DNA from: Stegostoma tigrinum
Lineage: Eukaryota
DNA: 64,000 bases
Direction of reading: 5' to 3'
Assembly: GCF_030684315.1 (NCBI RefSeq)
Contig: NC_081369.1
Location: 2,656,689-2,720,688, forward strand
The position numbers and the translations under genes were made by a program. Below the pieces are notes generated by a model that did no database searches, had not been told where the DNA came from, and saw only the letters and a program-made list of their open reading frames with translations. Shown piece by piece: positions 8,540 to 42,077 of the stretch (positions are counted from its first letter, which is position 1; each line of letters opens with the position of its first letter).

Positions 8540-9438
8540 TATACAGAAGTAGTGTTTATTTTCCCCAGCGCCCATGTTGTGTGTGTGCAGGTGCAAGACT
8601 CAGTAAAAACATTACTTCTTCAAATAAATTTATTAATATCACACCACCAGTGATGTGCAGAACCCCAGCAGTGGCAATGTTCGTGTGAGAAAAATGTGAA
8701 AGGGAGGGTAGGGATCAATTCTAAACAGAATTGGAAGGGCAGATGAAGGGCCTAAGCCCCCGCGGTGCCCACTGCTCCCTAAAGGCTTCAAGAATTTCTG
8801 CGCACAACGTGTGGTCCTTTTCCAGAGAGACCCGAGCTCAAACATAGCCACGGATGAGGATCAGACAGTCAGTGCAAATGGTCCCCCCCACGGCCCGCTG
8901 CCTGGACCTGTTAATGACCTGCTTGGCCAGACCCAGGAGCAGACCCACGAGGAGATCCTGTGACCCACTTGCCCCTCTCCACACCGGGTGCCCAAAGATC
9001 AGGAGCGTGGGGCTGAAGTGCAGCCAGAAACATAAAAGGAGGGCTTTAAGATAGCTGAAAAGGGAGTGCAAATGCCCACACCCAATATCCACATGGTCAT
9101 GGCCTCCACAGTGCCACAAAATAGACTGGGCTGGGAATCCATGAAAAACCGCAATCTGCAGTTCCATGGGACTGCTGTGTGCAACACCCTGTCCCTAAGT
9201 GCCCGAGGCAAAGCGGGAGGGCTCCTGCGTAGAGAACCGTCGACTGTGGGTCCCTGCCACCCAGTAGTAAATGGGCACAGCAAGGTGTGCTCAGGCAGTG
9301 GGTGAAGGAGAAGAGGCAGTTGGTGTACAGCAGCAGCTTGCCCTGTGTAAATTGGTCAGCCAGGGCTCCCTGATTGGTGCAGGTTAACAGCTTCAGTCAA
9401 GGACCTCAATATGATTCACCTGGTTCCAATCATTACAC
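8540..9438 (-). mobile_element. Tx1-clade non-LTR retrotransposon, deleted copy
   Basis: ORF2 C-terminal motifs RVLHTAVP.N.RL..F.DSQP.LFCG and FWLHFSPTLLIFGHP...LLVGLLLGLAK.VINRSRQRA. Confidence 0.8.
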
Positions 9439-10385: not shown

Positions 10386-12567
10386 ACCAGGTTTTATGCA
10401 ATACTCATGGACATCTTGCAGGGGAGTAATATCAAAGAAAAGAAGAAATTCTAACCAACATCAGAAAGCAAATGCTATTCCAAGCTCAAAGGATAACTAT
10501 CTTAATTTTTATCGCTTCTTAAATAACACAGGGCTGAAATCAAGTTAAATATTGACTCAAACTTTGCGTCAGCCCCATAGTTCAGTTGCATTTAAAAATG
10601 CATTCGATGACATGTATGCAGTATGTTGTCATTTTTCCAGGTTGTTGATATGTTTGAAACCTCATGTCATTAAAAATCTGTTGCAGCAGTGTGGACAGTT
10701 ATTAGGAGCATAAATAAGGCAGATAGGGATAAACATTTCCCCTTAGTAGAGGCATCAAAGACAAGGTGCATAAATTAATGTTGAGGAGCACATGATTTAG
10801 AGGATTTAGAGGGTACAGAGGAAAACACAAAATAAATGTCATTTCAAAGAGTTGTGAGTATCTTGAGCTAACTGTCTAAAAGAGTAATAGACGTTGGAAA
10901 CCGCAAGACATTTCAGAAAAGAATTAGGTGAGTACTTGAAACCATGCAGCATACAAGGATACAGGCCAAGTGCTGGGAAATGTGATTTAAGTAAGTCAGT
11001 GCTCAATGACCAACACACACACATAATGCCAAAAGGCAGCTTTCCTTGCAGTTAAAAAAATGTGACTCTGAATCTCGCATCAGCATGTTTATTGTTTATT
11101 GTTTAGGTTTGGGACTGTTACGCCCATATCTACCTGGAGATCATCACACCATGGTTCATGTTACCGTTCAAGGGCAGTTTCATCAACAAACATCAGACTC
11201 AAATAAACTCTCCGACCTCCACCAGCTGTGGCTCTGCAATGCAGGTGTCAGATGTTTTGATGCAACGTGTAATTTATTTAAGAATGTGATAAAAATTGTA
11301 ACAATGAGAAATGAAAGTAAGCTGTTCGAATATTAGCAAAAATGTTAACTTGTGACTTTGTCAATTTTTAATTTTTTGATCATATATCATTTTTCAAAAT
11401 TAGTAAGTTTTATTCTTCAGAATGCTGAACCATAAGGGGAGGAATGTATATTTCCAGAATACCAGTGCCAGCAGTTCAAACCTAGGCAGGATGTGGTGAT
11501 GTATCTCACTTTCAGTAAAGGTGCAGTGCAGTTAAAGTGTTAAATAGGGAGGGCATTTCACAATATGTGGGTGTATTACTTGGAAGTTCCACGATTCAAC
11601 TGGTACAGAGGAAAACACAAAATAAATGTCAGAAAGGACAGATACGGTGAAACAGAATCTTTTGCCGAACATATGAAGTATAATGACTAAATGTAAAATT
11701 AGTGTTAGGGAATTCAGATCAAAATCAGTCATGATGGTGGTGTTTGAGAGGAACAAATGCATCAGAGGTAAGCATAGCAGGTGGGTGAGGAGTTATGGAG
11801 AAAGGTTGATGAGGAGCAGTGACAGGAGGTTTACGAATGAGAGGGGAAGATGGGTTGGATGGGATGAGATGTCTAAGTCTGTGGTGGGAGTGTTAGACAT
11901 TTGTACGCAGTGCTTAGTCCCTTTGGGTGAGGATCAGTTTCCTGGAGGGTCCAAGTTAAACAGATCTGGTAAGATGGAGCTGTCTCTCAGGGTGGAATGG
12001 GGTCTGTTAAACAGGAGTCAGATTTTTCATTACACAGGAGTCAAAGCAAGTTTTATTCTGATAGTTTTTTTTTCCCTTGTGACACAGAAACGTAGAGTGT
12101 AGGAGCGGGAGTAAGCCATTCCGTTCTTTGAGCGCGGTCGAATCTGTATGATCTTGGCGTATCATCCAATTCAGTCCCCTGTTCCTGCTTTCTCTCTGTA
12201 TCCAATGATCCATTAAAACCTATATCTACAGCTTCCATGTAATTCACAAGAAACAGGTACATAACAATCAGAGATAATGCTCAATAATCTCAGCATGTTT
12301 GGCAGCACCTGTGCAAACACAAAGATATCGAGTTAATATTTCCTGTCCAGTATGACTCTTCTTCAGAGCTGCTAAGTTAGCTGGAACCCCCTGAAGCCCG
12401 CGTCTATAACTCAGAGTGTGATCTGTTTCAGGGAGCTCCAGGCACCAGATGACTTCTAACTGGAAATGTAAACTTCCCAGACACTTAACACAATATCAGT
12501 AAGTCACAACTTCCAGACATCCCAGTTGCACCTAGTCACCGAGTATCCAGGGACTGGAAGAACTGAG

Positions 12568-12874: not shown

Positions 12875-13992
12875 ATGAACACAGCAGACCAAACAGCATC
12901 TTTAGAGCAGGAAAGCTGATCTTTCAGGCCTAGACACTTTATTAGAAATGGGGGTGGGGAAGAGGATTCTGAAATAAATAGGGAGAGAGGGGGAGGCAGA
13001 TTGAAGATGGATAGAGGAGAAGACAGGTGGAGGGACAGAGAAGTCCAAGAGGCAGGGGTGGAGTCAATAAAGGTGAGTGTAGGTGGGGAGGTAGGGAGGA
13101 GATAGGTCAGTCCAGGGAGGATGGACAGATGAAGTGGGCAGGATGAGGCTACTACGTAGGAGATTCAGGTGGGGCTTGAAGTGGGAGGAAAGGATAAGTG
13201 GGAGGAAGAACAGGTTAGGGAGGCGGGGATGAGTTGGGCTGGTTTTGGGATGCAGTGGTGGGAGGGGAGACTTTGAACCTTGAGAAATCCACATTGATAC
13301 CAAAGGGCTGCAGGGTTCGCAAGCGGAATATGAGTTGCTATTCCTGAAACCTTCAGGCAACATCGTTGTGGCACTGCAGGAGGCCCAGGATGGACATGTC
13401 GTCTGAGGAACATGAGGGGGAGTTGAAATGGTTTTCGACTGGAAGATGCAGCTGTTTATTGCGAACCAAGCGTAGGTGTTCTGCAAAGCTGCCCCCAAGA
13501 CTACACTTGGTTTCCCCGATGTAGAGGAGGCCACAATGGGAACAGCGGATGCAGTATACCACGTTAGCAGATGTGCAAGTGAACCTCTGCTTGATGTGGA
13601 GGGTGTTCTTAGGGCCAGGGATGGGGTGAGGGAGGAGGTGCTGTGGCAGGTGTAGCACTTCCTGTGGTTGCAGGGAAATGTGCTGGGTGTGGTGGGGCTG
13701 GAGGGGAGTGCGGAGCGGACAAGTGAGTCATGGAGAGAGTGGTCCCTCCGGAAAGCAGATAAGGGTGGGGAATGAGAAATGGTGATGGGTTTGGATTGCA
13801 AATGGCAGAAATACCAGAGGACGATGTGTTGAACTGGCAGGTTGATAGGGTGATATGTGAGGACGAGGGGTATTATCTTTTGGTTGTTATTGTGGAGACG
13901 GGGTGTGAGGGATGCATTGCAGGAAATGCGGGAGACATGGTCAAGGGCGTTCTCGGCCACTGTGGGGGAGGAAGTTGAGGTCCTTGAAAAAC
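12875..13992 (-). mobile_element. Penelope-like element (RT C-terminus, GIY-YIG endonuclease, terminal repeat)
   Basis: ORF 13353..13658 FTCTSANVVYCIRCSHCGLLYIGETK; ORF 13064..14107 IPLVLTYHP. Confidence 0.9.
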
Positions 13993-14906
13993 GATCATCT
14001 AATTCAATCCCCTGTTCCTGCTTTCTGTCCATATACAATGATCCATTAAAAACTATATCTACATGTTTCTTGAAAGTCTTCAATGTTTTTGTCTCAACAG
14101 TTTTCATTTAATTAAGAAGTAACAGGTAAGTAACAAACATAATGCTTGCAAACCTCAACATGTTTGGCAACACTTGTGCAAACAGAAAGAAATAGTGTTA
14201 ACATTTCCCATCGAGTATGACCCTTCCTCAGAGCTGCTAGGTTAACTAGAACCCTCTGAAGCCCCCGACTCTAATTCAGAGTGTGATCAGTTTCAGTCAG
14301 ATCCTCATACCAGGTGATTTCCCTCTGAAATCATCAACTTCCCAGACACTTAACACATGTAGTAAGTCATGACGTCTAGACATCCCAGTTGCACCCAGTC
14401 TGCAAGTATTCAGGGACTGGAAGAACTCAGCTTCATGGAAATTCCCAATGAATGCCATTGCATTGGAGAATGAATAAAAGTAACTTGTGCTTGTTTATTT
14501 GATTATTTTCCTGCACATTTTATTACAATACATTTTATCACGCTTCAAAACTGGGCAGTCGCCAAAGGTGAATGTGGAGCGAGAAATATTTCTTAGATGC
14601 CAGAAAGCCAATTGTTTTTTCAAACATTTTTCATTTATCGATAATTTCTTCTTTGCTGAAAACTACTTAATGCATTTCTAATCAATTAAAAAATACACCA
14701 CATGGTGGCATGCATATCTGCACAACCGTGTTAATGTCACTCCATCAAAGTAAGCTACCATCTGTGGTAACTGACAACAGGTTTGTGCTGAGAAATTGTG
14801 CAACTTGGAACCATTGACATGTTGGTTTATTGTGCAAGACATACCATTCAACTGAGCTTATAGGCAAGTTGAAATATTGTAGAGCTGAGCTCAATACATG
14901 AAACAC

Positions 14907-16840: not shown

Positions 16841-17763
16841 AACGTAACGAACCCAACAGGAAGATCAAGTGCTCTCGATTTTAAATTCGTAGAGGCACTT
16901 AAAAGGTAATAAGAAACAGGATTTCGGCAGGGTAATCTGATATTGCTGCTCGTTTCTTCAGGATGCTATGGGTGAGAGATTTATAATTGAGCCCCACTTT
17001 CCTCCTTGCATTCCAAGATGTAGCAGCAGTTTCTCCTCCATGTCCTTCAAATTGCTACAGTTGCAGTGGGCAGCTTCTTCCCAACATTTCATTTTAAGAA
17101 GCTAACAACACTGAAAAGCAAAAGCACTTGTCCGTGTCTGCCGAACAAGGAGCCAACAAATCAAAGCATACTATCGAGGATTCAGTGTGAAGCCTTGCAG
17201 ATTATAGCATTTCAACTGCACATTCGAGCAAAGACAACTTGTAAAAGGGATAAAGGTGCCTGTCACTGATATCTGTTCAGGCAACAGGTTCCACATTGCT
17301 AGCACACTCGGGGATAAATTGTTTCATCATCACCCCCTCAAACTTTTCCATCAATGTCTCTAAGTCTATCACCCCCGCCTCACTGACATCAATATGAAGG
17401 TCACTGACATTTTCCCCACCGGCCCATCTCAGTTTTGTGCATTCCAATGAAATTCCCCCTCAGACTCATATTCTTTCCGTGTTAAAATCTTCATCCCATC
17501 CAATCCAATCACGTCTCAACAACAACCTCCCAAATACCGTCTATACCTCCTCTAGTGTCATAATTTTTGTAGCAGCTTCCAGCTGCAAAACCAACAGATC
17601 TTATTTGAGAAGGCGTGCGTTTTTTACACTCAGAAAGTAGTCATGTGCTCATTGACGCACACATGCATACATGAATAAGTTGGAGACACAGCTGAGCATT
17701 TAAGAAGCATTTGTCAGTCCTGTTCTCAGTCACAACTAATGGTCTCAGATTTTCGCTGCCAAT

Positions 17764-17818
17764 ATGTCTACGTGCCAATCACTGTGGGATGTCCGTCTGC
17801 TGTGCATCTTATGCGGAG
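17764..17818 (+). CDS. Gene A exon 1, probable leader (MSTCQSLWDVRLLCILCG)
   Basis: ATG to phase-1 GT donor 321 bp before the V exon; joins to give LLCILCGAAVG; the donor gtatat is weak. Confidence 0.55.
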
Positions 17819-20800
17819 GTATATATTTCTTTTGCTGTGCATTCACTGATCATAAGGAAGACACAATGTAAACTTACAGGTAGATTTGATAAATAAATGG
17901 ATATTTTTCATTCTTGTTGTCTTTCTTTTTTCAAGTCAGTTATTCCCAGAACTCATTTGTCACTGGGTCTGTCAGAAAAAAATGTAACATTCAATTAGGA
18001 CAATAGTTTAAAATGGGAGAATTAGTCGAAGAGTAAAATGTGGTAGATTGCTGTTGCATCAATGGCCTGGAATAAAGATGTTACTGAGGTGGTGCAGACT
18101 GTCCTTCGTGTTCAATCTATGTGTTTCCTTGGTTGACAGCTGCTGTGGGCAATTCCGCCAAAGTGAATCCGGACCTTACGCGAAAAACGGTGCAGGGAGG
18201 TTCATCAGTTCTCATGCACTGTACTTTCTCCGCCGAATTTGATTATTCAAATGTTACAGCTTACTGGTGGAAAGAAGATAATAAAACCGTTCTGCAGGAG
18301 GACAGCAAAAAGCTCTTCCGTGTAATTAGAGGAGAAGCCTCCCTTAAACTCCTGAACGTGACAGTCCGGGACGCTGGAACGTATCACTGTGCAGTCGCAT
18401 ATCAGAAACAAAAGCTTGGGCAAGCTGCTGTGCAACTTATTGTATATGGTAAGTGTCACCGCAGATAAACACGGAGTCTTAGCTGCTTGAAAACAATCTA
18501 AAACAGGAATCAAAACAATGTATTAGACACAGACATTTTGCGTATAATATTGGCAGTTGTTTAAAATGAAACGTTAAAGAAAATGGAGACCTTGGAGAAC
18601 CAGGAAATCCTCAAAATTTGAGATCTACTCTGTGTTAAAAATAAATCCCTTGTGGGATGTGGGCATCAGTGGCTGCCCAGCATTTATTGCGTGTCCCTAG
18701 TTGCCCTTGACAAGATGGTGGTGAGCTGCCTTCTTGAACAGCTGCAGCCCATGTGCTGGAAGTAGAATCACAATGCGATTAGGGGGAAATTACAGGATTT
18801 TCACCCAGTGTCAGTGAAGGAACAGTGCTATATTTCCAAGTCAGCATGGTGAGTGGCTTGGGAGAAACTGGCAGCTGGTGGTGTTTCCAAATACTTACTG
18901 CCCTTGCCCTTCTAGATGGTAGTGATCGTGCGTTTGGAAGGTGTTGACTGAGGGCTTTTGGTGAATTTCTGCGGTGCATCTTAGAAGTTACACGCTGCTG
19001 CTGCTGAGTATATGTGGTGGAGTGACTGAATGTGGTGCCAATCAGTGAGTGAGTGACTTTTTACTGGATGGTGTCAAACTTCTTAAGTGCTTTTGGACCT
19101 GCTGGCGTGCAGGCAACTGGGGAACATTCCAACACACTGCTGACTTGTGCCTTGCAGATGATGGACAGGCTTTGGGGAGTCAACAGTTGAGTTACTTGCT
19201 GCGGTATTCCCAGCCTCTGACCTGCGGTTCCATTTATATGGCTCACCCAGTTCTGTTTTTGCTCAATGGTCACCTCCAAAATGTAGATCGTGGGGAACTC
19301 AACTGATTGTGTGATGCCACTGAATGTTAGATTGTTTCTTATTGGAGATGGTGTTTGCCTGGCATTTGTGTGGCCTGCACATTCCTGGTAACTTTCAGCT
19401 CAAACCCGGATGGTGTTCAGTTCTTGCTGCACTTGATCATGGGTTGTTTCAGTTTTATGCATTTAGCTTATTTGCATTTATGCATTTTGCAGCAAAATTG
19501 ATTGCAGTACTCTCAAGTTTTACGTTGTATATGAATATAGAGTTACGGAATGAATATCCTTGAAGTTGTTTGTAGTACTATGCATTTTGAAATGTTTCTT
19601 ACCTCATGAAGAGAGCCAAGTTCTCAGCCCCATCACTTGGATGGCTTTTGTTAAATTTATTGAATCCAGGTCCGATTCCTCATCCTGTTTGCAAAAGAAA
19701 GGTGCAGTATGACAAATCAATCATGTTCCTGTTATTAAGCAGAGACAAATTCTGGAAACTCTTTTTTCTACATATGCAGGAGGTGTATGGAAAGCATTCG
19801 AGAGATTTTTTAAGCTGATAAATGGAATATCAATTTTATGTACTGTTCATAGCAATAATTAATACAACTTTCGTGCTGGAAATAAGATGTTTTGGTAACA
19901 TAAAAAATATATTTTTGCAGAAGATGCAAAGTCAATTTATTTAATTTGTGTTATTCACCATTCAGCTCTACCAGCTCCTCTGAAAATTGTCTCTGTTCCA
20001 TCGGAAGATCTTTTTTCTGCTTCTCTTCGACTCCAGTGCAGGACGTCTGACTTTTACCCGAAAGACTTTAACCTTACTTGGTTCAAAAATGGTACAAAGA
20101 TATTGACAGGATTTAGGAATGAACAGCTGGCAAAGCCTGAGGGTCTTTATGAAGTCGTCAGCACCTTAGAGTTGCGAGAGGCAGTCGAGAGTGGGACAGC
20201 TTACACCTGTCAAGTATATCACGTTTCAAGCTCATTTCCAGCAAATGCCAGCTATACTGTGATAAATAAAGGTAATATTTCATAGTATGTGGAACATTGA
20301 ATGCTCACATGTCATTCAAATGGGTAAATATGTAGAAAATGATTTTGGCAGTTTTTTGTATGTGATAACATCAAAATACAGTTATTTGTATGTGATAACA
20401 TCAAAATACAGTTATTTGTATGCGATTAAATCAAAGTTGAAATCAGGCCCTATTGTATGGATTTAAGTTTTCTTTCTTCGTGCTGTTTGGAGCTGATATA
20501 TAATTATTACATGTGCCTTTATTAAATGACGGATTAGTCCTCAACAATGGTCGCACAATTATTTTCTGCATACACTGTTGACGCGCAAAGGGCTGCATGA
20601 TCAATGTTAATTCTTCACAAAAGGTGAACAGTATTGAATTTGTTCAGGCCACAGAGGTTACTGTGTGCACTTCTGTCACCCTCCTACAAAAGGGATTTTA
20701 TGAAACTAGAAAGAGTGCAGAAAATATTGCCTAGGATGCAATGTAGACTGGAAAGTTTGAGTTACAACGAGGGTGTGGAGAGGCTGGGTCTCTTTTCTCC

Positions 20801-23800
20801 ACCCTGGTGAAGAGCAGATTGAAGGGTGCCTTGCAGAGGTCTATAAAATCATGACAGGCACAGATAAGTAGATAGCTAACAGCTTTTCCCCATGTTAGGG
20901 GAATCTAAAACTAGAGGGCAATCGTTTAAGGCGAGAGGAAAGAGATACAAAAGAATCCAGTGCAGCATTTTTTTTCACACAGCGATGAGGATGGTGAGTC
21001 TTGATGGGCTGTTAGAGGAGTAGTAGAAGCAACACCGTTTTGTCACTTAAGGAACATTTGAACAGGTAAATGGATGGGTTAGGCATGGAGGGACACGGAT
21101 GAAATGCAGCACCTGGGACTAGTTTAATTGTGAAAACTAGGCAGCACAGAAAAGTTGGGATGAAGGGCTTGTTTCCATGCTGTAAATCTCCATGACTCTA
21201 TGATATAGCAGCACTCAACCAAGCAGCTTCAGTTTAATTCCTCATTCACCAGAGCGCCACATACTTGATTAGTTGCTGACCTTTGATTCATAGCTGATTG
21301 GGTTGTAACTGCAGAGAGATTAAAATTATTTTAACTGAAGTTTACCTCCATGTGAATCTGAAGGAAATCGGGAAGCAGGTTTGAAGATTTATTTTTTTCA
21401 GACATTTTGTACGCAATCCGATTCAACTCCCACCAAATGATTTAATATTTAGTGACATAGCTTCGAGGGCTGAACACTAATTGTAATTAGCTCTGTTTCC
21501 GTTCATTTCAAATTTGGCAATAGTTGAGGTAGTTTCCACATTTGCCTATTTCTCTAAATTCCAGACATTTTGTGTCCGATTACATCGGGATCAGCTGAAA
21601 AATTGAAAAATTGAAATGCTGAGACTTCAAGCACTATATTTGCCATATTTACAAGGCAGTACGATTGAGAATGATGTACATGACATTTTAACCTGTATAT
21701 CTTCAGTATATGTTGTGACTCTTAAATTTGAATGTACATTAACATTACAGATTTTGCCTCGAACATCAGTGTTACTGTCGCCGCTGGTTGTGCTGCTGGT
21801 GCATTTGCAATTCTAATATTGGTCCCGATGATGGCCAAGGGTTTTCTGTTCTTTACATCCAAAGGTATGAACAGGGATAAAATGTCTCATTTAAATTAAC
21901 ATAATTGGGAACTGAACTTCTGAGCTATGTAACTTAAGCAACTATTTTATATAAAAACTCATCAAAATATATACCTTGCTTCACGTCAAATTATAAAAGA
22001 AGAAGGTTTGCAGCTTCAGTTTGCTCAGTTCTATTGGTGTAGATCAAAATTCATTGCTGAAAGAAGTTTCCATAGTTTCAACCCTCAAAACATAAATTCA
22101 AAGCATCTGTGTGTAACATTTAGAGCTACATTGCGAAACTGTTGGTCCTGTTATACCCTGTTTATAATTGCCAAATATTAGTTGACTTGCTTTTGGTCTC
22201 TTTGGTTTGTCATTGAGTACAAATATCAACCCTTTTTGTGTCAACTTCTGTCATTTTTATTTCTCAGGACGGGAAACCAAAAATTCAAGAAATCCAACTC
22301 AGCAAGAAGACGGGGTGAGGCAATTTTTCTTCATTCTCTATATTTTAATTTTCAAGTCTCATTGAACAATTTAAACTGGGAATCAGCATATGACTTTTGA
22401 ACATGCCAAGATGAGTCTTGAAGATTTCATAAGCTCTCAAAAGCTTAATTTCTGCTGAATAAAAACAAAATAAAGGAAATAGGATATAATGGAAAATTTC
22501 ACAAACAGTTGTAACTATGTTATATCACCATACTTGTTTATAAATGTGTAAGCTGTATCAATTAACTTTTTCTGATACTTTCAACTATTAATCATAGGTT
22601 TGAAGCTGACAGGCAACTTTGATTTTTCTTTTCTTTCATTATTAACAAGTGACAGTGTGCTGAATAATTTTGCCACATTGGTTACAGACATTATAATCAA
22701 TGTTGATTACATTGAGCTGATGACTATTTTGAATGGGAGCTTTCTAATTCGAAAGAGAAATGTTTGTTCTCTCCTTCCTTTCTACGTCGTTCAAAATTAA
22801 CTCATGCACTAGTCTAAGCTCGGTGATTGTGTCTGACTTCCACCCAGCGCCTGTACCAAAGCACTCAATATATTTTGTGGACAGCTTGCACAAGTTGGCT
22901 TCCTTAAATAACTTTTACTGTAGGTTGCCCCTCTGCGAGTCCAACGTGTTGCAACAACATGCTATCTTGAAACAGAAATAGACGAATTATTGTGAGGAAA
23001 TCGCGTCTCATTTTTAATTTTCAAAAATTGTATATCAGTGGCTTGTGAAAGGAAGCTCCCTATCTGTTGACTAATTCAGTAATAACTGAGAACAGTTTGT
23101 CTAAACTCTTAAAAATTAAAGTAAAACGTTGCCGACGTCAGAATACGCAAATGAATTACACATGTGGTTCTTGACTCCGAATGAGTGCATTGCATACCAG
23201 CATATTTAATTACTTTAAATGCATTTTCAAAGCTGTTGAAGTCTTTTAATGAATTCAATGGCTTTATTGTCTCAGTTTCAGTCGAGGGTCTGAGCTTGCC
23301 ATTTTAAAGAAACTTCCCCGAAATCCCTCCCTGACAACAATGTCACGAAATTCCCTGGACTGCAGTAAATCGAGAAAGCCGGTTAACTTCTGGGACCTTA
23401 ATCGTAAGCAGTTATTGGCGCCAAATACTCGTCTTGTCACGGAGGCTCTCATACCATTAAAAGTAGTTGGTGGTGCGGAAATGACTCGTTTCTGTACTGG
23501 AGGTGTAGCAAAAGTTAAATTTCTTTCTTGGGGTCTTCACAAAACCCGAACAAAGTTTTTTTTTCGTTACTGCACGTCTTTCTGTGAAATGTTGCACCTG
23601 CACTGTTGGAGGTAACGGAATAAAGTCCTCTGATGTCCAGATGCAATGCTGAACCTGTGCTTCATTGTTTGATAAACAGTGGATCAGATCAAAAGTGAAG
23701 ACAAAATTAACTATGATTGAGAAATACCTCACAGAAGACCAAAGAGTACCTTTTACAGCAATGAAATATTGTGGTTTACTTTTCAGACAAAAGCGCATTG

Positions 23801-24920
23801 TACTTGTAACATTTTTTTTTGCTTTGTCACTAACCTGAACTTGTTCCTCCCTAAATAGTTGACACATCTTCCAACTTAAAATATCAGTAATTTACTTCAA
23901 AATGCTTTGAAATTGCGCTGCACCTTGGTGTTCACTTCAGGCTTTAATGCGTTCATTTATTAACATTTAAATGGCCGATTCAAATAATTACCCTCCTTTA
24001 TTCATAAGGGATAAGGGAGGTTCTAAAATTACTTTTCTAATAGCAGTGGTAAGCACATTTGTTCCTTTTCTCCAATTGACTTACTAATTGAACAAGTGTA
24101 ATGTGAGAGAATGTTCTGTCAATACCTGTTTCATACACCCTCCAAATGAAAGATATTAATAAGTTATTTCAAGTAATTGCCACTTTTATAAACTGTACTG
24201 AATACTCAATTTGTAGCAGAATGCAATGAAAAAGAAAGCCGTCTGTCAGAATTCAAAAAGGTAATTATTTAAAATGATACACGCAGCCTTCTCTTCTGCA
24301 TAATTAAAACAATTTGAAGATGAATAAATTTGAAAACAAAAATAACATTTGCTCGTCGTTTTTATGTGTGATGTTCCTGGCAAGAAAACGTTCAGAGTGA
24401 GAAACTATAAAGTTTTGTAATTGTAATGAAATGCTTGCAAAGATTGTGCAACAAGCTCATTGTCCCTGTTAAGAATGTACGTTTGTCTCTTGACGCCAAA
24501 ATAAAATAACCTAATAAGCCAAACATTGACTTTCTAGAGAAAAGAAGAGATGCCTGATGATAAATTGACATATGCTGCTCTTAATCTAGTTGGCTCTGAG
24601 GATGGCATAATGCTGAAACAACAGGAAGAAATCACAGTGTATGCAGAGGTACATTTCAGGTCATATATGTAAATACTCAGTTTATTCATCAGCAAGTGTT
24701 GATCTGGAGATGATATTGAAAATTGCTTTGTATAATTTTCATCTAGAATGATTTAAATAAATGATAATTCAGTCTCAATGTTATTTTTCAGACAAAACAC
24801 AGCATGGCAGACGGCAGACTGACTTACCTTGCTCTGAAATCCAATGATTCCAGTACATCATCAAAATCCAAAAACCAAGAAAAAAGTCCAGTGTATGCAG
24901 CGGTGAAAAGCAGAAACTAA
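17764..24920 (+). CDS. Gene A: inhibitory IgSF receptor, signal peptide-V-C1-TM-ITIM/ITSM tail (SIRP-alpha-like), 356 aa; exons 17764-17818, 18140-18448, 19966-20271, 21751-21864, 22268-22314, 24538-24648, 24792-24920
   Basis: All introns GT-AG with compatible phases (1,1,1,1,0,0); 1071 nt joined with no internal stop; canonical V (C, W, DAGTYHC) and C1 (C, FYP, W, YTCQVYH) motifs; tail motifs LTYAAL, TVYAE, LTYLAL, PVYAAV. Confidence 0.85.
18140..18448 (+). CDS. Gene A exon 2, V-set domain including the G strand
   Basis: AAVGNSAKVNPD...VLMHCTF...AYWWKE...ASLKLLNVTVRDAGTYHCAVAYQKQKLGQAAVQLIVY; gacag| and |gtaagt. Confidence 0.95.
18645..19450 (-). mobile_element. CR1/L2-clade LINE 3' end in intron 2 of gene A
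   Basis: Reverse complement of the family at 990-1926 (ORF 19061..19279 AGQRLGI...PQSLSIICKAQV). Confidence 0.8.
19966..20271 (+). CDS. Gene A exon 3, C1-set domain
   Basis: ALPAPLKIVSVPSEDLFSASLRLQCRTSDFYPKDFNLTWFKNGTKILTGFRNEQLAKPEGLYEVVSTLELREAVESGTAYTCQVYHVSSSFPANASYTVINK; 306 nt, phase 1-1. Confidence 0.95.
20356..20421. repeat. 30-bp tandem duplication (ttgtatgtgataacatcaaaatacagttat)
   Basis: Directly visible. Confidence 0.85.
20640..21205 (+). mobile_element. CR1 LINE 3' end in intron 3 of gene A
   Basis: KLERVQK...EVYKIMTG motif and tail ccatgactctatga. Confidence 0.75.
21751..21864 (+). CDS. Gene A exon 4, transmembrane
   Basis: DFASNISVTVAAGCAAGAFAILILVPMMAKGFLFFTSK; tacag| and |gtatga; phase 1-1. 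Confidence 0.85.
22268..22314 (+). CDS. Gene A exon 5, juxtamembrane cytoplasmic
   Basis: GRETKNSRNPTQQEDG; strong polypyrimidine acceptor, |gtgagg donor; phase 1-0. Confidence 0.75.
24538..24648 (+). CDS. Gene A exon 6, ITIM exon 1
   Basis: RKEEMPDDKLTYAALNLVGSEDGIMLKQQEEITVYAE; tttctag| and |gtacat; phase 0-0. Confidence 0.85.
24792..24920 (+). CDS. Gene A exon 7, ITIM exon 2 and stop
   Basis: TKHSMADGRLTYLALKSNDSSTSSKSKNQEKSPVYAAVKSRN*; tttttcag| acceptor. Confidence 0.85.
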   Translation, partial: TKHSMADGRLTYLALKSNDSSTSSKSKNQEKSPVYAAVKSRN

Positions 24921-25825
24921 ATTGGGGAAACAAAAATACTCATAAAAGATAGAAGCACACAATATATCACTGAGACTTTTATGCTTTTTATCAATTTTAG
25001 GCTGTTGTTTTCCTCATGTAAGTCTGGCATAATTTTGCAAAACTGTTGAATAATTTCTTCCCTTCAAGTAATGTCACCTGGATCTACTTTGTTTTAGCTC
25101 GAACAGTTACAACTAAAACTCGCAATTCAATTACTTCCAATTGTCAAGGATCTCCTTATTCCCTTTAAATCTGCACAAAGTTTGACATAATAATCATTAA
25201 AATTATTTTCGAGAATATTTTCTGTGGTTGTATGCCATCAGGTATTTATAATTCCATTTGTACTATGTGACAAATTCTCACAAGGTTTCTTTCAGTTAAT
25301 TGTCTTTAACTTGTTTATATTTCACTGTCTTTTCTGGCATGAATTGATACTTCATTCTGCTTTCATTGTGCCAGTAGTTTTAATCCTGTTTGTCCTCTTG
25401 CTGTTCCTGTGAAAATGTTTGTGTGCTTTTCCATATTGAGAAAGCTAAAGAGATGTGATTGCTAATCTGCATGACATTATGATGGTTCATTTTGCTTAGT
25501 TAATTTGCTGAAGTTAATAATTGGCAGTTTCTTCTTCTTGGGCAGCTGGAAAGAGAAACAGTTAGATTAATTGGAACAGTTAAAATTTTAGGGGATCTTG
25601 ACAAGATCCTTCCATGGGAACATTAGCACTAGGAACCATGGTTTAAAAAAAAATCAGAGGTTGACCCTTTAAAACAGCATTACACATGTACTTGTTTCAG
25701 AAGTCGAGGAGTTTTTGGAACACTCTTTCTCAAAAGATCGTGGAAGCAAGGCTCTTGAATATTTTAACGTCATAGATTGATAGATTCTGATGGAGAACAG
25801 AGGTGAAATGTTATCGGGGTAATGT

Positions 25826-26710
25826 TTGAATGTGCGATATTCCTCCCCTCTTTTATCCGCCTTCCGCAGGGACCATTCACTCCGGGACACCCTGGCCCAT
25901 ACTTCCTTCGCCCCCAACACATCCCCACAGCCCCACCGTGTAACTGGTGATGGCGCAACACCTGCTCATTTACCCCCCCCCCCCACTCCCCAGTATCCAA
26001 GGGCCCAAACATACCTCCCAGGTGAAGCAACGCTTCATCTGTACTTCCACGAATCTAGTCTCTGGCATTTGCTGCTCACAATGTGGTGTCCTCTACATTG
26101 GGGAAGCAAAGCGTAGACTTGGCGACGTGTACGTTCTGCTTGCAAAAAGACCCTGAACTACCTGTTACCTGCCACTTCAATGCACCACCCTACTCCCTGG
26201 CCAACATCTGTCTCCCGCTAGCGACAGTGTTCCAGTGAAGCCCAGCACAAGCTGCAGGAACAACACCTAATTTTCTGCTTGGTGACCCTACAACCCTCCG
26301 AGCTCAATATTGGGATCAATAATTTTAGGGCCCAACTCTCCCATGTACCAGACCACACCCACACACCAGACCTTGTTACCACATAGCTTGCCATTACACA
26401 GCCTCTATTGTTCATCACTAACAGTCCCCATTAACACCTATTCAACCTCCCAGCCTTATCGTTAGCAACTCCGCTGTCTGTTGAACTGTCTTTCTCTCTG
26501 TTTGGAATTTATTCTCTCATTTACTCCCTACTCCAGCCAGCTTCCTTTTTTCCGTGTATAAACCGACGTTTTCCCAGCCACCATCAGTTCTGAAAAAGCG
26601 TCACCGGACCTGAAACATTAACTCAGTTTTCTCCTCCACTGATGTTGCCAGACCTGCTGAGATTTTCCAGCAATTATGTTTTTGTTCCTGATTTTCAGCA
26701 TTCGCAGTTC
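25826..26710 (+). mobile_element. Penelope-like element 3' part (second family)
   Basis: ORF 25947..26156 QRFICTSTNLVSGICCSQCGVLYIGEAKRRLGD (GIY-YIG); terminal repeat with degenerate ctgaaaa...gaaac motif. Confidence 0.8.
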
Positions 26711-28080
26711 TTTTGGTATTTAAGGTTTTCTTGGGGCCTGCGATGGGGGTGAGGGGACGGTGTAGGAGCAGGTGTAGCACTTCCTGCAGTTGCAGGGAAA
26801 AGTGGCAGGGTTGGTGGGGCTGGTGGGGAGTGTGGAGCAGACAAGGAAGTCACAGAGAGAGTGGTCCCTCCATAAGGCAGATAAGGGTGGGGAGGGAAAA
26901 TGTCTTTGGTAGTGGGGTCAGATTGCATGTGGCGAATGTGCTGGTGGATGATGTGTTGAGTCCGGAAGTTTATGGGGTGGTATGTGAGGATGAGGTGGAT
27001 TCTGTTTTGATTGTTATTCTGGCAGGGGGGGGGGTGTGAAGGATGAGTTGAGGGAAACACAAGAGATGTGGTCAAGGGCATTTTCAGCCACTGTGGAGGG
27101 GATGTTGTGGTCCTTGATAAATGAGGACATTTGGGATGTTCAGGAATGGAATGCCTCAACTTGGGAGCAGATGCAGTGGAGACGAAAGAACTGGGAATAG
27201 GGGATGGCATTTTTGCATGAAGCTGGGTGAGAGGAGATGTTTCTTGGTAGCTGTCGGAGTCCGTAGACTTGAAATAGATATTGGTTTCCAGGTGGTTGCC
27301 AGAGATGGAAACAAAGAGGTCCAGGAAGGACAGAGAGGTATCGGAGATGATCCAGGTGAACGTAAGGTTGGGATGGAATGTGTTAGTGAAGTGGACGAAC
27401 TGTACGAGCTCCTTGTGGGAGCTCAAGGTGGTGCCGATGCAGTCATCAGTATAACAGAGGAAGAGGTGGGGTTTAGGGCCAGTGTAGCTTTGGGAGAGAG
27501 ATTGTTCCACGTAACCTACAAAGAGGCAGGAACAGCTTGGGCCCGAGCAGGTACCCGTGGCCACCCACTTTGTCTGTAGAAAGTGGGAGTCATTGAAGGA
27601 GAAGTTGTTAACACGGAGGACGAGTTTGGATAAGCGGACAAGGTGTAAATGGAGGGGGATTGGTCAGGCCGGCGGGAGAGGAACAAGTGGAGGGCCTTTA
27701 GACCATCTGTATGGGTAATGCAAGGATATAGGGACTGAACGTCGATGGTGAACATGAGATGTTGGGAACCTAGGATTTGGAAGTTCTGGAGGAAGTGGAG
27801 AGTGTGGGTGGTGTCACGGATGTAGGTGGCAAGTTCCTGGACCGGGAGTGGGGGGAGAAAATGCAGTCAAAATAAATGGAGCTAATTTTGGTGGGGCAGG
27901 AGCAGGCGGAGACAATGGGTCGACCAGGGCAGCCAGGTTTGTGGATCTTGGGCAGGAGATAGAAATGGGGGTTTGGGGTTGGGGAACGATGAGGTTGGAG
28001 GCTGTGGGTGGGAGTTTATCTGAGCTGATGAATTTGCGGATGATCTGGGAGGTGATGTTTTGTTGGTTGAGGGTGAGGCC
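26711..28080 (-). mobile_element. Penelope-like element RT region
   Basis: FTIDVQSLYPCI, MATGTCSGPSCSCLFVGYVE, LCYTDDC, FTNTFHPNLTFTW: Penelope RT motifs, frameshifted. Confidence 0.9.
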
Positions 28081-28298: not shown

Positions 28299-31200
28299 GC
28301 TGGAGACACTGTCAAACTTGACTGGTCATGGACACTAGCAGGAGGTAAGCAGCATCGTTCTGTGTCGTGATCTAGTCCCTGAAAGCATCCCGAACCTCTC
28401 AGGAGTGGGCTATCATTTTGGACCCCCCCCCCCCACGCCTTCAGCTAGAAGGCTCAAATTTGGCTGAAACAGGTCTAGGACAAAGTGTCCATGGCAAGAA
28501 ATTATCCATAGCGCGTGATTTTCGGTCGTGATATGTGACCCCAGTAAGCTATCTACAACCTCCAAAGGCAGGCCTTCCCCACACCACCCCCAGTACCTGA
28601 CATAACAGAGGCCAAAATGCTGTGGCTGCTACTGCACTACTTTGAAATGCAATTTTCGTTGGTGGAGAGTCTAACTAGAATAGTGCGGAAATATAATGTT
28701 CCAAAAGGACAGTGGTCCCTGGAGGACGTGAAACAGGTTTGGGGAGAAACTACCCGGCAGAAGAACAAGGACTGAGTGAAATGTTCCCGCACATTAATGG
28801 GACAACTCTGCCAAAGAAATGAACTCATGACCCGGTCAGCTCAATACCCAGAAATAAATAAACTCAAAGAATAGGTAAAAGCCATGCACGAGCAACTGCA
28901 GAAGGAGAGAATCAAACGAGAGAAAGCTAAAGTTAAAAATCAGGAGCTTGTGCAGCAGAACAGGAAACTGAAAGATGAACTGACAGTTTTGTCAGTTTCT
29001 TCGCTGGCTCCAAAAACAATTCCGAGTCTCTACCCAACCACCTGAGATATCCAGGAAGTGATTAAATGAACCAAAGCTATAAGAGTTATAGCTCTTAAAA
29101 TTGAGGAATCCTCTAGCAGTGACAGTGATGAAGACTACACACTCCCCAACACCGTTTTTACAGCCCCTTAAACCAAAAAAAAGGTAAAACCCGAGAAATT
29201 AGTGAGGCAAAAAATAGAGGATGGCAGGGAGGTAGATGTTCCAATGAAGCAAACCGAAAACCACATTGCCCATATGCCTGCGACTCTTGACAACATTCAC
29301 AGGTGGTCTAGAGAAATGCCTCACCCAAAGAAAGGACTGATGAAAACCTGGGAAAGCCTAGGCTGGTTTAGGGAAATATATCTGCTCCATCCCTGGGAAG
29401 GGGTACAATTCCGGACTGTTATAGTCACCAACAGAGAGGGACGTCGCCTCCAAGAGGCAGTGAAACATGAATCCGAGCAGAATCTACAAGCTGGCTGGAC
29501 AGCAATAGGACAGAGCTACAGGGATTTAGTCCACCTAAAACCAATTGGACAAAGGTCACTGCCTGCTGCCAAAAAGCCGCTGAGGAAGTCTCCAAATCAG
29601 AGGAAATGTTTTGGACAACCTGGAAGGAATATGCAGGGGTCCCAAATGTAAAGGGTGAAAAAGATTTCGAAAACTGTGACTCCAGCCCACTTAAATCTAC
29701 CTTTATGGCAGGACTCAAATCAGGGCTCGCTAAGATGCTGAAACTCACTAAACTGGATTGGGACCAAACACTATGAGCTGATTGTCCGAGCCCACCAGCT
29801 GAAATGGGAAATGGCAGCTCAGGTGCAAGCCATGTAGACAAGAGAAATAAGACGGACCCCTGGTAGCCCCGAAACAACCCAGGACAGATGCCCAGGGAAA
29901 TTTTATGCCTGTAGGAAGGAGGGTCCGGGTCCAAGAATCATTGGCACAGGGGGAAATGACAGAGCCCTCACCCCCCACCACCACCACCAAACCACCAACC
30001 CCCCCCCCCCCCCCCCCACCCCGGCAAGAGCCCTGAGAAAGAGAAACTCCAGTGGCAGGAAATAATCCCAACCTCCCAGAACAGTTCAAAAGGCTGTACG
30101 TCCAACAGCAGCAGGAACTGCTGGATTTGACAAATATCTAAGTGACCCCACTTTATCCCCTCCAAGCTCCTACCAGCTTTTTGCCAGCAGAGAGGAGACA
30201 GACTGTACGTGACCATGAAGGTGGATGACTTAGACATTAAGTGTCTCTTGGACACTGGAGCAGAATAACATGCCTTCCCTTGAAGTATGAAGCCAATCTC
30301 CCACTAGACAGGACAGGAAAGACAGCCTATGGAGCAGGAGCTGACAGGATTGAAATAAAGAAAACAAATTCGATAAACATTGCATTTGACCCCCACGAAC
30401 TGGTAATCTGTGTGTGGGTAGGACCTGTAGCTCAACCACTCCTCGGGCTGGATATCGTTTCACAATTAAATTCATCCCTACACTTCAATGATGGACAGTT
30501 GAGGTGGCCTATTAGAACCCCACAGAGGGAAGATTTAGAGGACCGCCCCGTCTGGGCAAAAGACAAAGATGATTGCAGGTTACTAGAAATGGGACCTGAA
30601 ACATTCACAGGGATACCTTGCACCAACAGTAATCCCATCAGCCCAATGTCAATTACAGGAGTCTTCCCAATATTTCAAAGACATGAGGAAAGGGGAATTC
30701 TGGTTAAAGCACACAGCACTGTGGAAGCCCAGGAGAATACGTGGGCAGATCAAGCAGCTAAAAGAGCTGCCTCCAATCATTTCTGCCAAGAGCATCAAAT
30801 GCACTTCTGTCGGCTCAACACTGGGACAACAATCAAGATCTCTAATCAATGCAGAGTGAGTGTTCCCGAAAAGAAAAATGGGACTGGATTGAGAATGGAC
30901 CCAAGTTATGTGAAGATGGAATTTGGAGGCGAGAGTCGAATTGCCCAATTGCACCCACTGCCGTGATGTCATATCTGGTGCAACAAATTCACTCCTGGAC
31001 AATTTGGAACTGGAACACATGACAGCCTGGTTCCAAGGCAGCTGGTGGGGACAAGGCTTTAAAAGGTATGCTCAGGCCATAGTAGACCAAAATCAAGACT
31101 CAAAATCAACCAAAGTTCCCCAGCTGAAAGCACCAGCACCCCCAGGCCCATTCCAACACTTACAGGTTGAGTATTTCTTGCTGCCACGCTGTGCAAGGAT

Positions 31201-32036
31201 TTTCAGACATGCTGGTCATTGTGGATAGGTTCTCTAGATAGATGGAAGCTACACCCACAAGAAAGGCCACTGCCAACCACACAGCCAAGGTATGGTGTAG
31301 GGACTACATACCCCAATGGGGAGTATGCCCCAGCACTGACTCAGACCAGGGGACCCATTTCACAGGAACAGCATATCAGGTGGTCTGCCGATTATTCAGA
31401 ATTGAGTGGAATTTTCACTGTCCCTATCATCCTCAATTCAGGGCAGGTGGAAAGGATGATCCAGACCCTTAAACAAAGGCTGGCTCAATACCACCAGGAA
31501 GGGTTACCCTGGCCAAAGGCATTACAAATGTTGCTGTGTAGTGTCAGGGCTACTCCCAACAAAACAACAGGCCTGAGCCCATTTGAGATAGCGACAGGCA
31601 GGCTAATGTCCCGACCCTGGACAATAGACCTGCGAGAGGGCGACTATCATCTTATGAATGATGCCCTAATGTCATAGTGTCAGGCACTAACCGATAAGTT
31701 CTGCTTCCTCATAGGTATTGGCTTCCTGGACGGACCCACCAGAGGGAGGGTATGACATCGTACCAGGCATGTAGGTACTCGTGAAGAAGGCCCACAAGGA
31801 ACCATTCTATACCAAGGTGGCGTACTTGGCACTACTGAACGCCCAGTCAGCTGTCAAGGTTCAGGGAAAGAAAGCCTGGACTCATGCCTCGCATATCAAA
31901 TGGACATCTTGCAAAATAGAAGAAGCAGAGTCTGAATAGACACCATGACACCCTGAAATTATTGCCAACTTTACATGGTACAATGGCACTTATTTCATTT
32001 GTGGTCTTAAAGCATACACATGGCTCCCTGACTGTC

Positions 32037-41810: not shown

Positions 41811-42077
41811 TGATGTCTAAAAAATACATTATGTCACTGTTCCATCGCTATGAGAATGAAATGCAATAACGATGAAATTTACAGTCTGCAACGTAAGTCA
41901 TATGACTAAACTTACATAGTGACACGTTGTCAGCTACCTAGCCAAAATCAAAAACAAAACAAAAGCTATGGACAGTGGCGCTTTTCATTGACATGCTTTA
42001 AAATGGTTCAAATAGGTCACGGGATGTCGCACAACACTAGGAACTGAGAAACAGTGTTAAAAGTTCACGTTTCATAC

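What the first reader, a model, noticed from the sequence alone, without database searches (positions are those of the whole stretch)
17764..24920. Apparently intact shark SIRP-alpha-like inhibitory receptor with V-C1 ectodomain and four-tyrosine tail
Seen: seven phase-compatible GT-AG exons join into a 356-aa ORF (leader, V, one C1, TM, tail) that the ORF track shows only in fragments. The tail reads KLTYAALNL...TVYAE...RLTYLAL...PVYAAV, with Tyr spacing 23/14/23. Known: mammalian SIRP-alpha is V-C1-C1 with ITYADL/TEYASI/LTYADL/SEYASV in the same alternating order, and C1 domains are largely confined to antigen receptors, MHC/B2M, tapasin, SIRP and a few relatives such as B7-H6. Inference: an SHP-1/2-recruiting receptor that is either a cartilaginous-fish SIRP homologue with one C1 or a separate V-C1 inhibitory family.
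Basis: partly seen in the sequence, partly recalled or inferred. Interest (0 to 1): 0.8.

Follow-up and report, generated by a model that had tools for sequence, protein, structure and literature searches.

The report
Shark SIRP-like V-C1 inhibitory receptor gene
This is a real, intact zebra shark gene for a cell-surface immune receptor with an inhibitory four-tyrosine tail; it is one already machine-annotated member of a large, unnamed shark, ray and chimaera gene family that resembles mammalian SIRP-alpha without being shown to be its direct counterpart.

Summary
Seven GT-AG exons (17764-24920, + strand) give a 1071-nt, 356-aa open frame: leader, V-set, C1-set, uncharged TM, and a tail with Tyr spacing 23/14/23.

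A public Stegostoma tigrinum protein, named 'tyrosine-protein phosphatase non-receptor type substrate 1-like' (SIRP-alpha-like), is 100% identical from the V exon to the stop. It uses two upstream exons without a signal peptide.

The gene belongs to a family found across cartilaginous fish. Members either have an uncharged TM with ITIM tails or an Arg-bearing TM with a short tail, which is the layout of paired receptors.

Evidence for a SIRP link:
- The tail aligns colinearly with all four tyrosines of a rodent SIRP-alpha.
- In my tree the C1 is sister to SIRP domain-2-type C1s.

Evidence that the link is unproven:
- That tree split is weak (91/74), and the alternative topology I tested is not rejected (p-AU 0.26).
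- The V is not SIRP-like.
- There is one C1, not two.

So the gene is SIRP-like, and orthology is not shown. SHP-1/2 recruitment is inferred from motifs only. No RNA data were available.

Earlier notes of this scan report the same family at several other places in this genome. This is a new member of a known kind, of moderate interest.

The parts
17764..17818 (+). Exon 1: start codon and leader peptide MSTCQSLWDVRLLCILCG, phase-1 donor
   Evidence: ATG with A at -3 and a GT donor. It is homologous to the leaders of the paralogue P0165 (MFVCHSLWDVCLLGILCS) and of family members in other species. The public model P0161 does not use it.
18140..18448 (+). Exon 2: V-set Ig domain with the G strand in the same exon. 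The J-like motif has decayed (LGQAAVQLIVY).
   Evidence: Pfam V-set E=4.9e-11. AF2 pLDDT 87.9, with the nearest folds being PD-L1 V and I-set domains. 100% amino-acid identity to the V of paralogue P0165. Relatives keep G-x-G-T.
19966..20271 (+). Exon 3: C1-set Ig domain (YTCQVYH)
   Evidence: Pfam C1-set E=4.1e-14. AF2 pLDDT 87.5; the 50 Foldseek matches listed are MHC class II beta2 and Ig light-chain constant domains, TM 0.73-0.84. 88% identical to a whale shark relative and 90% to P0165.
21751..21864 (+). Exon 4: stalk and uncharged transmembrane segment (VTVAAGCAAGAFAILILVPMMA)
   Evidence: Translation. No charged residue in the TM, unlike the Arg-bearing TM of short-tailed relatives.
22268..22314 (+). 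Exon 5: juxtamembrane cytoplasmic exon (RETKNSRNPTQQEDG)
   Evidence: AG/GT sites and phase 1 to 0. Same junctions as in public protein P0161.
24538..24648 (+). Exon 6: first two-tyrosine unit, ITIM LTYAAL followed 23 residues later by TVYAET
   Evidence: It is a diverged duplicate of exon 7 (about 42% identity). DNA contigs of two samples cover it without a difference.
24792..24920 (+). Exon 7: second two-tyrosine unit, ITIM LTYLAL followed 23 residues later by PVYAAV, then the stop codon
   Evidence: The tail end is conserved in horn shark P0021 (LVYAAVKNSN).
25196..25201 (+). ATTAAA, a candidate polyadenylation signal about 275 nt after the stop
   Evidence: Pattern scan. Not verified by RNA.
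9271..9384 (+). First exon of the public model P0161 (with 11107-11316). Together they encode 108 aa without a signal peptide.
   Evidence: tblastn of P0161 and splice-site reading. No Pfam match. Probably a model artefact or non-coding 5' exons.
11107..11316 (+). Second upstream exon of the public model P0161, spliced directly to the V exon in phase 1

Best explanation
The locus is an intact zebra shark (Stegostoma tigrinum) gene. It encodes a type I membrane glycoprotein: signal peptide, one V-set domain, one true C1-set domain, an uncharged transmembrane helix and a 105-residue tail. It is the inhibitory type of a multigene family found in sharks, rays and chimaeras. Annotation pipelines mostly name this family 'SIRP-alpha-like'. 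The family also has activating-type members, with an Arg in the membrane span and a short tail. The likely mechanism is inferred, not shown. The V domain binds an unknown ligand. Src-family kinases then phosphorylate the tail. The tail is two copies of one exon-encoded unit, a canonical ITIM (LTYAAL, LTYLAL) followed 23 residues later by a second tyrosine (TVYAET, PVYAAV). Each doubly phosphorylated unit can engage the tandem SH2 domains of SHP-1, SHP-2 or SHP-2L, which are conserved in sharks, and the phosphatase damps activating signals. The layout is that of SIRP-alpha, PECAM-1 or PD-1. The gene works like SIRP-alpha, but direct descent from the SIRP gene is not shown.
For: Gene model and open frame. 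Domain identities. A public protein, P0161, is 100% identical from V to the stop. Exons are unchanged in DNA contigs of two samples. Neighbouring family copies are all broken while this one is open. Family and its range (Heterodontus, Rhincodon, Chiloscyllium, Hemiscyllium, Heptranchias, Scyliorhinus, Pristis, Hemitrygon, Mobula, Amblyraja, Callorhinchus). Two TM and tail classes. The 23/14/23 tyrosine spacing recurs across the family, including the chimaera; rodent SIRP-alpha has 24/17/24 with the same alternation of motifs. The family tail profile aligns with all four SIRP-alpha tyrosines at 17.1 bits, against a maximum of 7.4 in 2000 shuffles. [quoted passage not shown]
Against: No RNA evidence was available: all four runs that hold the locus are DNA. 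The leader exon therefore rests on homology only, and the public model uses other 5' exons. Two of the four tyrosine motifs are non-canonical: TVYAET has T at +3 and PVYAAV has P at -2. No binding, phosphorylation or ligand data exist. The closest paralogue has lost the second unit by a frameshift, inferred by comparing its protein with the window's last exon, so the full tail is not indispensable in this lineage.
Confidence: 0.75

Rival explanations
1. It is the direct cartilaginous-fish orthologue (or co-orthologue) of SIRP-alpha/beta, having kept V, the domain-2-type C1 and the four-tyrosine tail, and never having gained, or having lost, the third domain.
For: The best non-chondrichthyan hit of the family profile is a true rodent SIRP-alpha (122 bits). 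The C1 tree puts the family (100/99) next to a clade of rodent SIRP-alpha d2 with lungfish and coelacanth SIRP-type C1s (99/95), and the split has support 91/74. The tail is colinear with SIRP-alpha over all four tyrosines. Paired activating forms exist, as with SIRP-beta.
Against: The tree with the family next to Ig-like and multi-C1 (titin-like) domains is only 0.69 log-likelihood units worse, p-AU 0.26. The data set held no TCR, Ig light-chain, MHC, beta2-microglobulin or tapasin C1. The family V profile scores SIRP V domains at only 15-21 bits, against 42 for a carp NITR domain. In the PDB, the family profile matches Ig lambda chains (81-68 bits for V+C1) about as well as three-domain SIRP-alpha (89.7 bits), and UrIg2 scores higher (102.6 bits). 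ITIM-type motifs are constrained by SH2 specificity and can converge. There are many copies here, not one locus. Synteny could not be tested.
Confidence: 0.15
2. It is a recently inactivated or silent copy: open by chance in a decaying cluster, not expressed as a membrane protein.
For: It sits among at least four broken relatives within 64 kb. No RNA run holds it. The public model lacks a signal peptide. The J-like motif of the V has decayed.
Against: The 1071-nt frame is open across seven exons and all splice sites are intact. The sequence is identical in two samples. The motif positions are conserved with horn shark and other species. A leader exon homologous to the family's leaders is in place and in phase.
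Confidence: 0.08
3. It is a B7/butyrophilin-like ligand or adhesion molecule (V plus a C1-like domain) rather than a receptor related to SIRP or antigen receptors.
For: Taken alone, the V exon is nearest in sequence and fold to PD-L1, B7-H3, B7-H4, ICOS ligand and I-set domains. Some relatives are auto-named 'NCR3 ligand 1-like'. This copy has no canonical G-x-G motif.
Against: Close relatives keep G-x-G-T in the G strand. The second domain is a strong C1-set match (53 bits), while the CD80-type and butyrophilin-type C models score 19-21 bits. The tail carries two canonical ITIMs in a conserved four-tyrosine module. The family profile matches antigen-receptor chains, UrIg2 and SIRP, not B7 proteins.
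Confidence: 0.04

Closest known systems
Mammalian SIRP-alpha (SHPS-1/PTPNS1) and the SIRP paired-receptor family
   Same: Type I membrane protein with an N-terminal V, a true C1-set domain and an uncharged TM. The four-tyrosine tail alternates ITIM with xxYA(S/E)x at spacing 23/14/23, against 24/17/24 in a rodent SIRP-alpha, and aligns colinearly with it. Activating relatives have a basic TM residue. The C1 is weakly placed next to SIRP d2.
   Different: One C1 instead of two. The V is not SIRP-like (15-21 bits). In this copy the J-like motif has decayed. The family has many members. Orthology is not supported statistically. CD47 binding is unknown.
The unnamed chondrichthyan 'SIRP-alpha-like' V(J)-C1 family as predicted in public databases (for example XP_067905931.1 of Heterodontus francisci, XP_048462082.1 of Rhincodon typus, XP_007902824.2 of Callorhinchus milii)
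   Same: Same leader, V, C1, TM and tail plan. C1 identity is 88% to the whale shark protein and about 60% to the horn shark one. The same 23/14/23 tail is present. The zebra shark protein P0161 is this gene itself.
   Different: This copy and its twin P0165 have lost the G-x-G motif of the V. The public model of this gene has a different 5' end, probably wrong.
PRARP genes of birds, reptiles and amphibians (Fu et al. 2019, J Immunol 202:1992)
   Same: From the paper's title and the mention in PMC10751288: non-rearranging IgSF genes of V(J) type, regarded as relics of an antigen-receptor precursor.
   Different: Not tested here.
UrIg and UrIg2 of elasmobranchs (PMC12227049)
   Same: Non-rearranging shark genes with a V followed by C1-set domains. 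UrIg2 is among the best solved-structure matches of the C1 exon and of the family profile.
   Different: UrIg2 has ten Ig domains and forms disulfide-linked homodimers. The paper's main text never uses the terms ITIM or tyrosine. Here there is one V, one C1 and a signalling tail.
Teleost novel immune-type receptors (NITR)
   Same: Families of non-rearranging V-type receptors with inhibitory (ITIM) members. A carp NITR13 domain is the best outside match of the family V profile (42 bits; BLASTP E=2e-06 with this V).
   Different: The family's C1 profile finds no C1-set domain in that carp NITR13. Its tail scores only 7.4 bits against the family tail profile, no better than shuffled sequence.

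Membership tests
SIRP family (SIRP-alpha type) | N-terminal V-set domain with a J-like G-x-G motif in the G strand | tested here: inconclusive
   The V-set match is clear. This copy reads LGQAAVQLIVY, while relatives read VGKGTG.QL.VY or GNGTGS.L.V. The family V profile scores SIRP V domains at only 15-21 bits.
SIRP family (SIRP-alpha type) | Two membrane-proximal C1-set domains (V-C1-C1; PMC2785349) | tested here: not met
   There is a single C1 exon between the V and TM exons. Within the gene span (17764-24920), the C1 query finds only that exon.
SIRP family (SIRP-alpha type) | Cytoplasmic module of four tyrosines, ITIM alternating with xxYAxx, in two pairs | tested here: met
   LTYAAL / TVYAET / LTYLAL / PVYAAV at spacing 23/14/23, against ITYADL / TEYASI / LTYADL / SEYASV at 24/17/24 in rodent SIRP-alpha P0173. 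The alignment is colinear at 17.1 bits; the shuffle maximum is 7.4.
SIRP family (SIRP-alpha type) | Descent from the SIRP gene (phylogeny) | tested here: inconclusive
   The C1 is sister to the SIRP d2-type clade with support 91/74. The alternative tested is not rejected, p-AU 0.26. Sampling of C1 classes was incomplete.
SIRP family (SIRP-alpha type) | Conserved synteny with the SIRP locus | not tested
SIRP family (SIRP-alpha type) | Binding of CD47 and of SHP-1/SHP-2 | not testable with these tools
   Needs protein experiments.
Chondrichthyan 'SIRP-alpha-like' V(J)-C1 paired-receptor family (unnamed) | Leader, V, C1 (P.PLKI...YTCQV.H), TM and a tail built of 23/14-spaced tyrosine units; high-scoring match to the family profiles | tested here: met
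   The window V scores 126.5 bits and the C1 153.4 bits against the family profiles, where outside proteins reach at most 42 and 55 bits. In the tree the C1 sits inside the family clade (100/99). Tail.
C1-set immunoglobulin domains | C1-set sequence profile and fold | tested here: met
   Pfam PF07654 at 53.1 bits (cut-off 21). The 50 Foldseek matches listed are MHC class II beta2 or Ig light-chain constant domains.
ITIM-bearing inhibitory receptors | (S/I/V/L)xYxx(I/V/L) in the tail and no charged TM residue | tested here: met
   Two canonical ITIMs, LTYAAL and LTYLAL. Uncharged TM. TVYAET is not a canonical ITSM, because +3 is T.
Rearranging antigen receptors (Ig/TCR) | V exon split from J by recombination signals | tested here: not met
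   The V exon runs through the G strand to a normal GT donor. V and the J-equivalent lie in one germline exon.
B7/butyrophilin family | V without a J motif plus a CD80-type or butyrophilin-type C domain; no ITIM module | tested here: not met
   C2-set_2 scores 18.8 bits and C2-set_3 21.4 bits, against 53.1 for C1-set. Relatives carry G-x-G-T. An ITIM module is present.
PRARP | Sequence relationship to chicken PRARP genes | not tested
   No PRARP sequence or paper text was available.

The most novel reading that the evidence does not exclude
The family of cartilaginous fish is the true sister lineage of the SIRPs. On this reading, a V, a domain-2-type C1 and a duplicated two-tyrosine tail unit were the ancestral SIRP plan. 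A paired inhibitory/activating SIRP-type checkpoint, possibly with a CD47-like partner, would then date to the common ancestor of jawed vertebrates, close to the non-rearranging stock from which antigen receptors arose.
Probability: 0.3. Interest if true: 0.65.

Novelty: new member of a known kind. Interest (0 to 1): 0.42.

Why it matters
C1-set domains are almost confined to antigen receptors, MHC molecules and a few relatives such as SIRP (PMC2785349). Sharks, rays and chimaeras carry a large family with V-C1 ectodomains, a SIRP-alpha-style four-tyrosine tail and activating partners. That makes the origin of SIRP-type checkpoints, and their link to the stock from which antigen receptors arose, directly testable. 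I found no paper that describes this family. This particular gene adds an intact inhibitory member with the full tail. It has a twin with an identical V domain and a broken tail, and its public database model has a 5' end that probably needs correction. On its own it is one more copy of a family that the databases already predict and that this scan has noted several times.

Tried and rejected
- **RNA support.** The look-up of sequencing runs found only DNA holders. Read laying therefore showed genomic contigs and no splice joints.
- **Word search with the C1 exon alone.** Blank, because only proteins of 56-177 aa were candidates.
- **C1-only family profile against the PDB.** The list was flooded by three-C1 antibody heavy chains, so it could not rank SIRP against single-C1 proteins. 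It was uninformative.
- **Single-exon PDB and Foldseek searches.** They confirm the domain types but do not discriminate between families.
- **Naming the outside hits.** Most are 'uncharacterized'. The turtle, lizard and frog proteins named SIRP-alpha(-like) have several C1 domains and an internal hydrophobic span. I treated them as doubtful models, not as SIRP references.
- **Other tools.**
  - UrIg was considered and rejected as the family.
  - The PRARP paper is not held.
  - The Atlas could not read the window's own exon. The run on paralogue P0165 gave mixed V-C1, Ig kappa, SIRP, CD80 and butyrophilin clusters.
  - Pfam found nothing in the repeat-derived ORFs or in the upstream exons of the public model.
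- **A possible 41-nt exon at 24220-24260.** Rejected: it breaks the frame and the public model does not use it.
- **The joined model.** My own seven-exon model was not sent to any search. Exons were searched apart. Where a whole protein was needed, I used public proteins that the searches had returned (P0161, P0165, P0021).


Full report
**Observation**

I read 17500-25200 and fixed the exon borders by script.
- Seven exons on the + strand are all flanked by AG and GT: 17764-17818, 18140-18448, 19966-20271, 21751-21864, 22268-22314, 24538-24648 and 24792-24920.
- They add up to 1071 nt, or 356 codons, with one stop at the end.
- Entry phases are 0,1,1,1,1,0,0. Phase 1 around the Ig-domain exons is usual for this superfamily (my own knowledge).
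- The tail tyrosines are at 289, 312, 326 and 349 in KLTYAAL, ITVYAET, RLTYLAL and SPVYAAV.
- The ORF listing shows only fragments of this gene.
- A further AG/GT-flanked 41-nt stretch (24220-24260) breaks the frame and is not part of the model.

Exons were searched one by one. Where a whole protein was needed, I used public proteins that the searches themselves returned.

**Domains**
- Pfam on single exons gives V-set (E=4.9e-11) and C1-set (E=4.1e-14, 53 bits). The CD80-type and butyrophilin-type C models reach only 19-21 bits.
- AlphaFold models built with family alignments are confident: pLDDT 87.9 for the V and 87.5 for the C1.
- The 50 Foldseek matches listed for the C1 model are MHC class II beta2 and Ig light-chain constant domains, TM 0.73-0.84. 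It is a true C1 domain.
- The V model is a compact eight-strand domain nearest to PD-L1 V and I-set domains.
- The TM is uncharged.

**The gene is already predicted**

The C1 exon was run with HMMER against 1.84 billion representatives. The close single-C1 hits that I had named are all from cartilaginous fish.

A word search with the best full-length relative (horn shark XP_067905931.1, 357 aa) returned three Stegostoma tigrinum proteins.
- One of them, P0161 (445 aa), is named 'tyrosine-protein phosphatase non-receptor type substrate 1-like'. It is 100% identical to the window's V, C1, TM and three cytoplasmic exons.
- The 5' end differs. The public model starts at 9271-9384, continues at 11107-11316 and splices straight to the V exon. 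That gives 108 residues with no signal peptide and no Pfam match.
I take it to be the true first coding exon.

No RNA run holds the locus. The four holders are genomic DNA. Their contigs, from two samples, cover the C1 exon and all three cytoplasmic exons without a single difference.

**Family**

Relatives occur in Heterodontus, Rhincodon, Chiloscyllium, Hemiscyllium, Heptranchias, Scyliorhinus, Cetorhinus, Pristis, Hemitrygon, Mobula, Amblyraja and the chimaera Callorhinchus.

Their automatic names are inconsistent: SIRP-alpha-like, SIRP-beta-1-like, SIRP-gamma-like, tapasin-related-like, NCR3 ligand 1-like, TCR beta-like, MHC class II beta-like, CDON-like and uncharacterized. I found no paper that describes the family.

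The family has two forms:
- an uncharged TM with a long tail of ITIM units, as here;
- a TM with an embedded Arg (for example HLIYRSILGILVIIILAVIIFDHV) and a short tail.

This is the layout of paired inhibitory and activating receptors.

Most members have a canonical J-like G-x-G-T motif in the V. This gene and its twin P0165 read LGQAAVQL, one residue shorter.

**The tail**
- Exons 6 and 7 are diverged duplicates, about 42% identical.
- Each encodes an ITIM followed 23 residues later by a second tyrosine.
- The 23/14/23 rhythm recurs across the family, including the chimaera protein. In a horn shark protein it is repeated four times.

**Relation to SIRP**

For:
- The family profile's best hit outside cartilaginous fish is a real rodent SIRP-alpha (122 bits).
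- That protein carries ITYADL/TEYASI/LTYADL/SEYASV at spacing 24/17/24.
- A profile of the family tail aligns with all four of its tyrosines in register, at 17.1 bits. The best of 2000 shuffled tails scored 7.4, and a carp NITR tail also scored 7.4.
- In a careful C1-domain tree the family (100/99) is sister to a clade of rodent SIRP-alpha d2 with lungfish and coelacanth SIRP-type C1s (99/95). SIRP d3-type domains lie elsewhere.

Against:
- The split in that tree has only 91/74 support.
- The tree with the family next to Ig-like and multi-C1 domains is just 0.69 log-likelihood units worse (p-AU 0.26).
- The data set had no TCR, Ig light-chain, MHC, beta2-microglobulin or tapasin C1 domains.
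- The family V profile scores SIRP V domains at 15-21 bits, against 42 for a carp NITR domain.
- In the PDB the family profile matches UrIg2 (102.6 bits), SIRP-alpha (89.7, three domains), Ig lambda chains (81-68) and TCR beta (68.9) to similar degrees.
- A C1-only profile search was swamped by antibody heavy chains.
- There is one C1, not two.

My reading is that the gene works like SIRP-alpha and may be distant kin. Membership of the SIRP family in the strict sense is not shown, and one defining feature (V-C1-C1) is not met.

**Mechanism (inferred)**
- LTYAAL and LTYLAL fit the ITIM consensus. They come close to the SHP-2 N-SH2 preference (I/L/V)x-pY-(T/V/A)x(I/V/L).
- TVYAET and PVYAAV have Ala at +1, which the C-SH2 domain favours, but each departs at one position.
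- SHP-1, SHP-2 and a third gene, SHP-2L, are conserved from sharks to mammals, with conserved SH2 binding sites (PMC12151841).
- A spacing of 23 between the two tyrosines of a unit lies in the range of known tandem-SH2 ligands such as PECAM-1, PD-1 and SIRP-alpha (my own knowledge).
- The most likely action is therefore recruitment of an SHP phosphatase, dependent on ligand binding and on Src-family kinases. The ligand is unknown.

**Surroundings**
- The window is a decaying cluster. Every other family exon in it carries stops or frameshifts:
  - a same-subfamily copy on the minus strand (V 3685-3357, C1 2634-2361);
  - a second-subfamily copy on the minus strand (V 47515-47210, C1 42350-41974);
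  - a third-subfamily copy on the + strand (V 54083-54391, C1 55645-55939);
  - a lone C1 at 58278-58583.
- The target gene is the only intact copy in the window.
- The V of twin P0165 is 100% identical in protein, while its C1 is 90% identical.
- P0165's last exon reads in a shifted frame relative to window 24792-24920 (P0165 against the sequence). This removes the second ITIM and the fourth tyrosine.

Earlier notes of this scan report the same family at about -445 kb, -140 kb, +77 kb, +207 kb and +7.0 to +7.5 Mb on this scaffold. I used them as leads only.

**Verdict**
- The gene is a new member of a known kind: an ITIM-bearing, SIRP-like Ig-superfamily receptor, already machine-predicted.
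- What remains of interest lies at the level of the family: whether it is the sister lineage of the SIRPs.

Noticed in passing
window 2361-3685 (-), 41974-47515 (-), 54083-55939 (+), 58278-58583 (+): At least four further V and/or C1 exon sets of the same family, from three or four subfamilies. All carry stop codons or frameshifts. The target gene is the only intact copy in the 64 kb.
   Followed up: partly
window 18142-18447 against public protein P0165 (zebra shark, 'SIRP beta-1-like', 331 aa, encoded outside the window): The V domain is 100% identical in protein to that of a paralogue whose C1 is only 90% identical. The paralogue's last exon is frameshifted, so it loses the second ITIM and the fourth tyrosine. 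This pattern suggests recent gene conversion or duplication of the ligand-binding exon. The paralogue's DNA could not be fetched.
   Followed up: partly
window 9271-9384 and 11107-11316; also 42842-42964: The public model of this gene begins with two upstream exons that encode 108 aa without a signal peptide. The first 41 aa of another zebra shark family protein (P0162) match 42842-42964 at 93%, although the rest of that protein is not encoded here. Both look like doubtful 5' exons in the automatic models.
   Followed up: partly
window 18931-19530 and 20531-21330 (introns 2 and 3): The summed contig depth is hundreds to tens of thousands of times that of the exons, with many loose ends. These stretches are high-copy interspersed repeats inside the introns.
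   Followed up: no
window 20360-20430 (intron 3): A short tandem repeat of about 29 bases (...ttgtatgtgataacatcaaaatacagttat...), in two and a half copies.
   Followed up: no
window 29200-31700, 56444-56965 (-), 60576-61049 (+), 13064-14107 (-), 26695-27564 (-): Long ORFs that look derived from mobile elements. None matched a Pfam family at E<=0.01.
   Followed up: partly
public protein P0163 (Hemiscyllium ocellatum, 'CDON-like', 546 aa): This model fuses two neighbouring family genes. Its first half is the counterpart of the target gene. Its second half matches the broken copy at 47515-41974. The two subfamilies therefore appear to be neighbours in both carpet sharks.
   Followed up: partly
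public proteins P0039 (lungfish) and P0184 (coelacanth); P0052, P0053, P0058 (turtle, lizard, frog): The lungfish and coelacanth proteins have SIRP-type V domains (YYC.K.K...G.G..L.V..KPS.PS) and C1s that group with rodent SIRP-alpha d2 and d3. The turtle, lizard and frog proteins named SIRP-alpha(-like) have several C1 domains and an internal hydrophobic span, and look like fused or different genes.
   Followed up: partly
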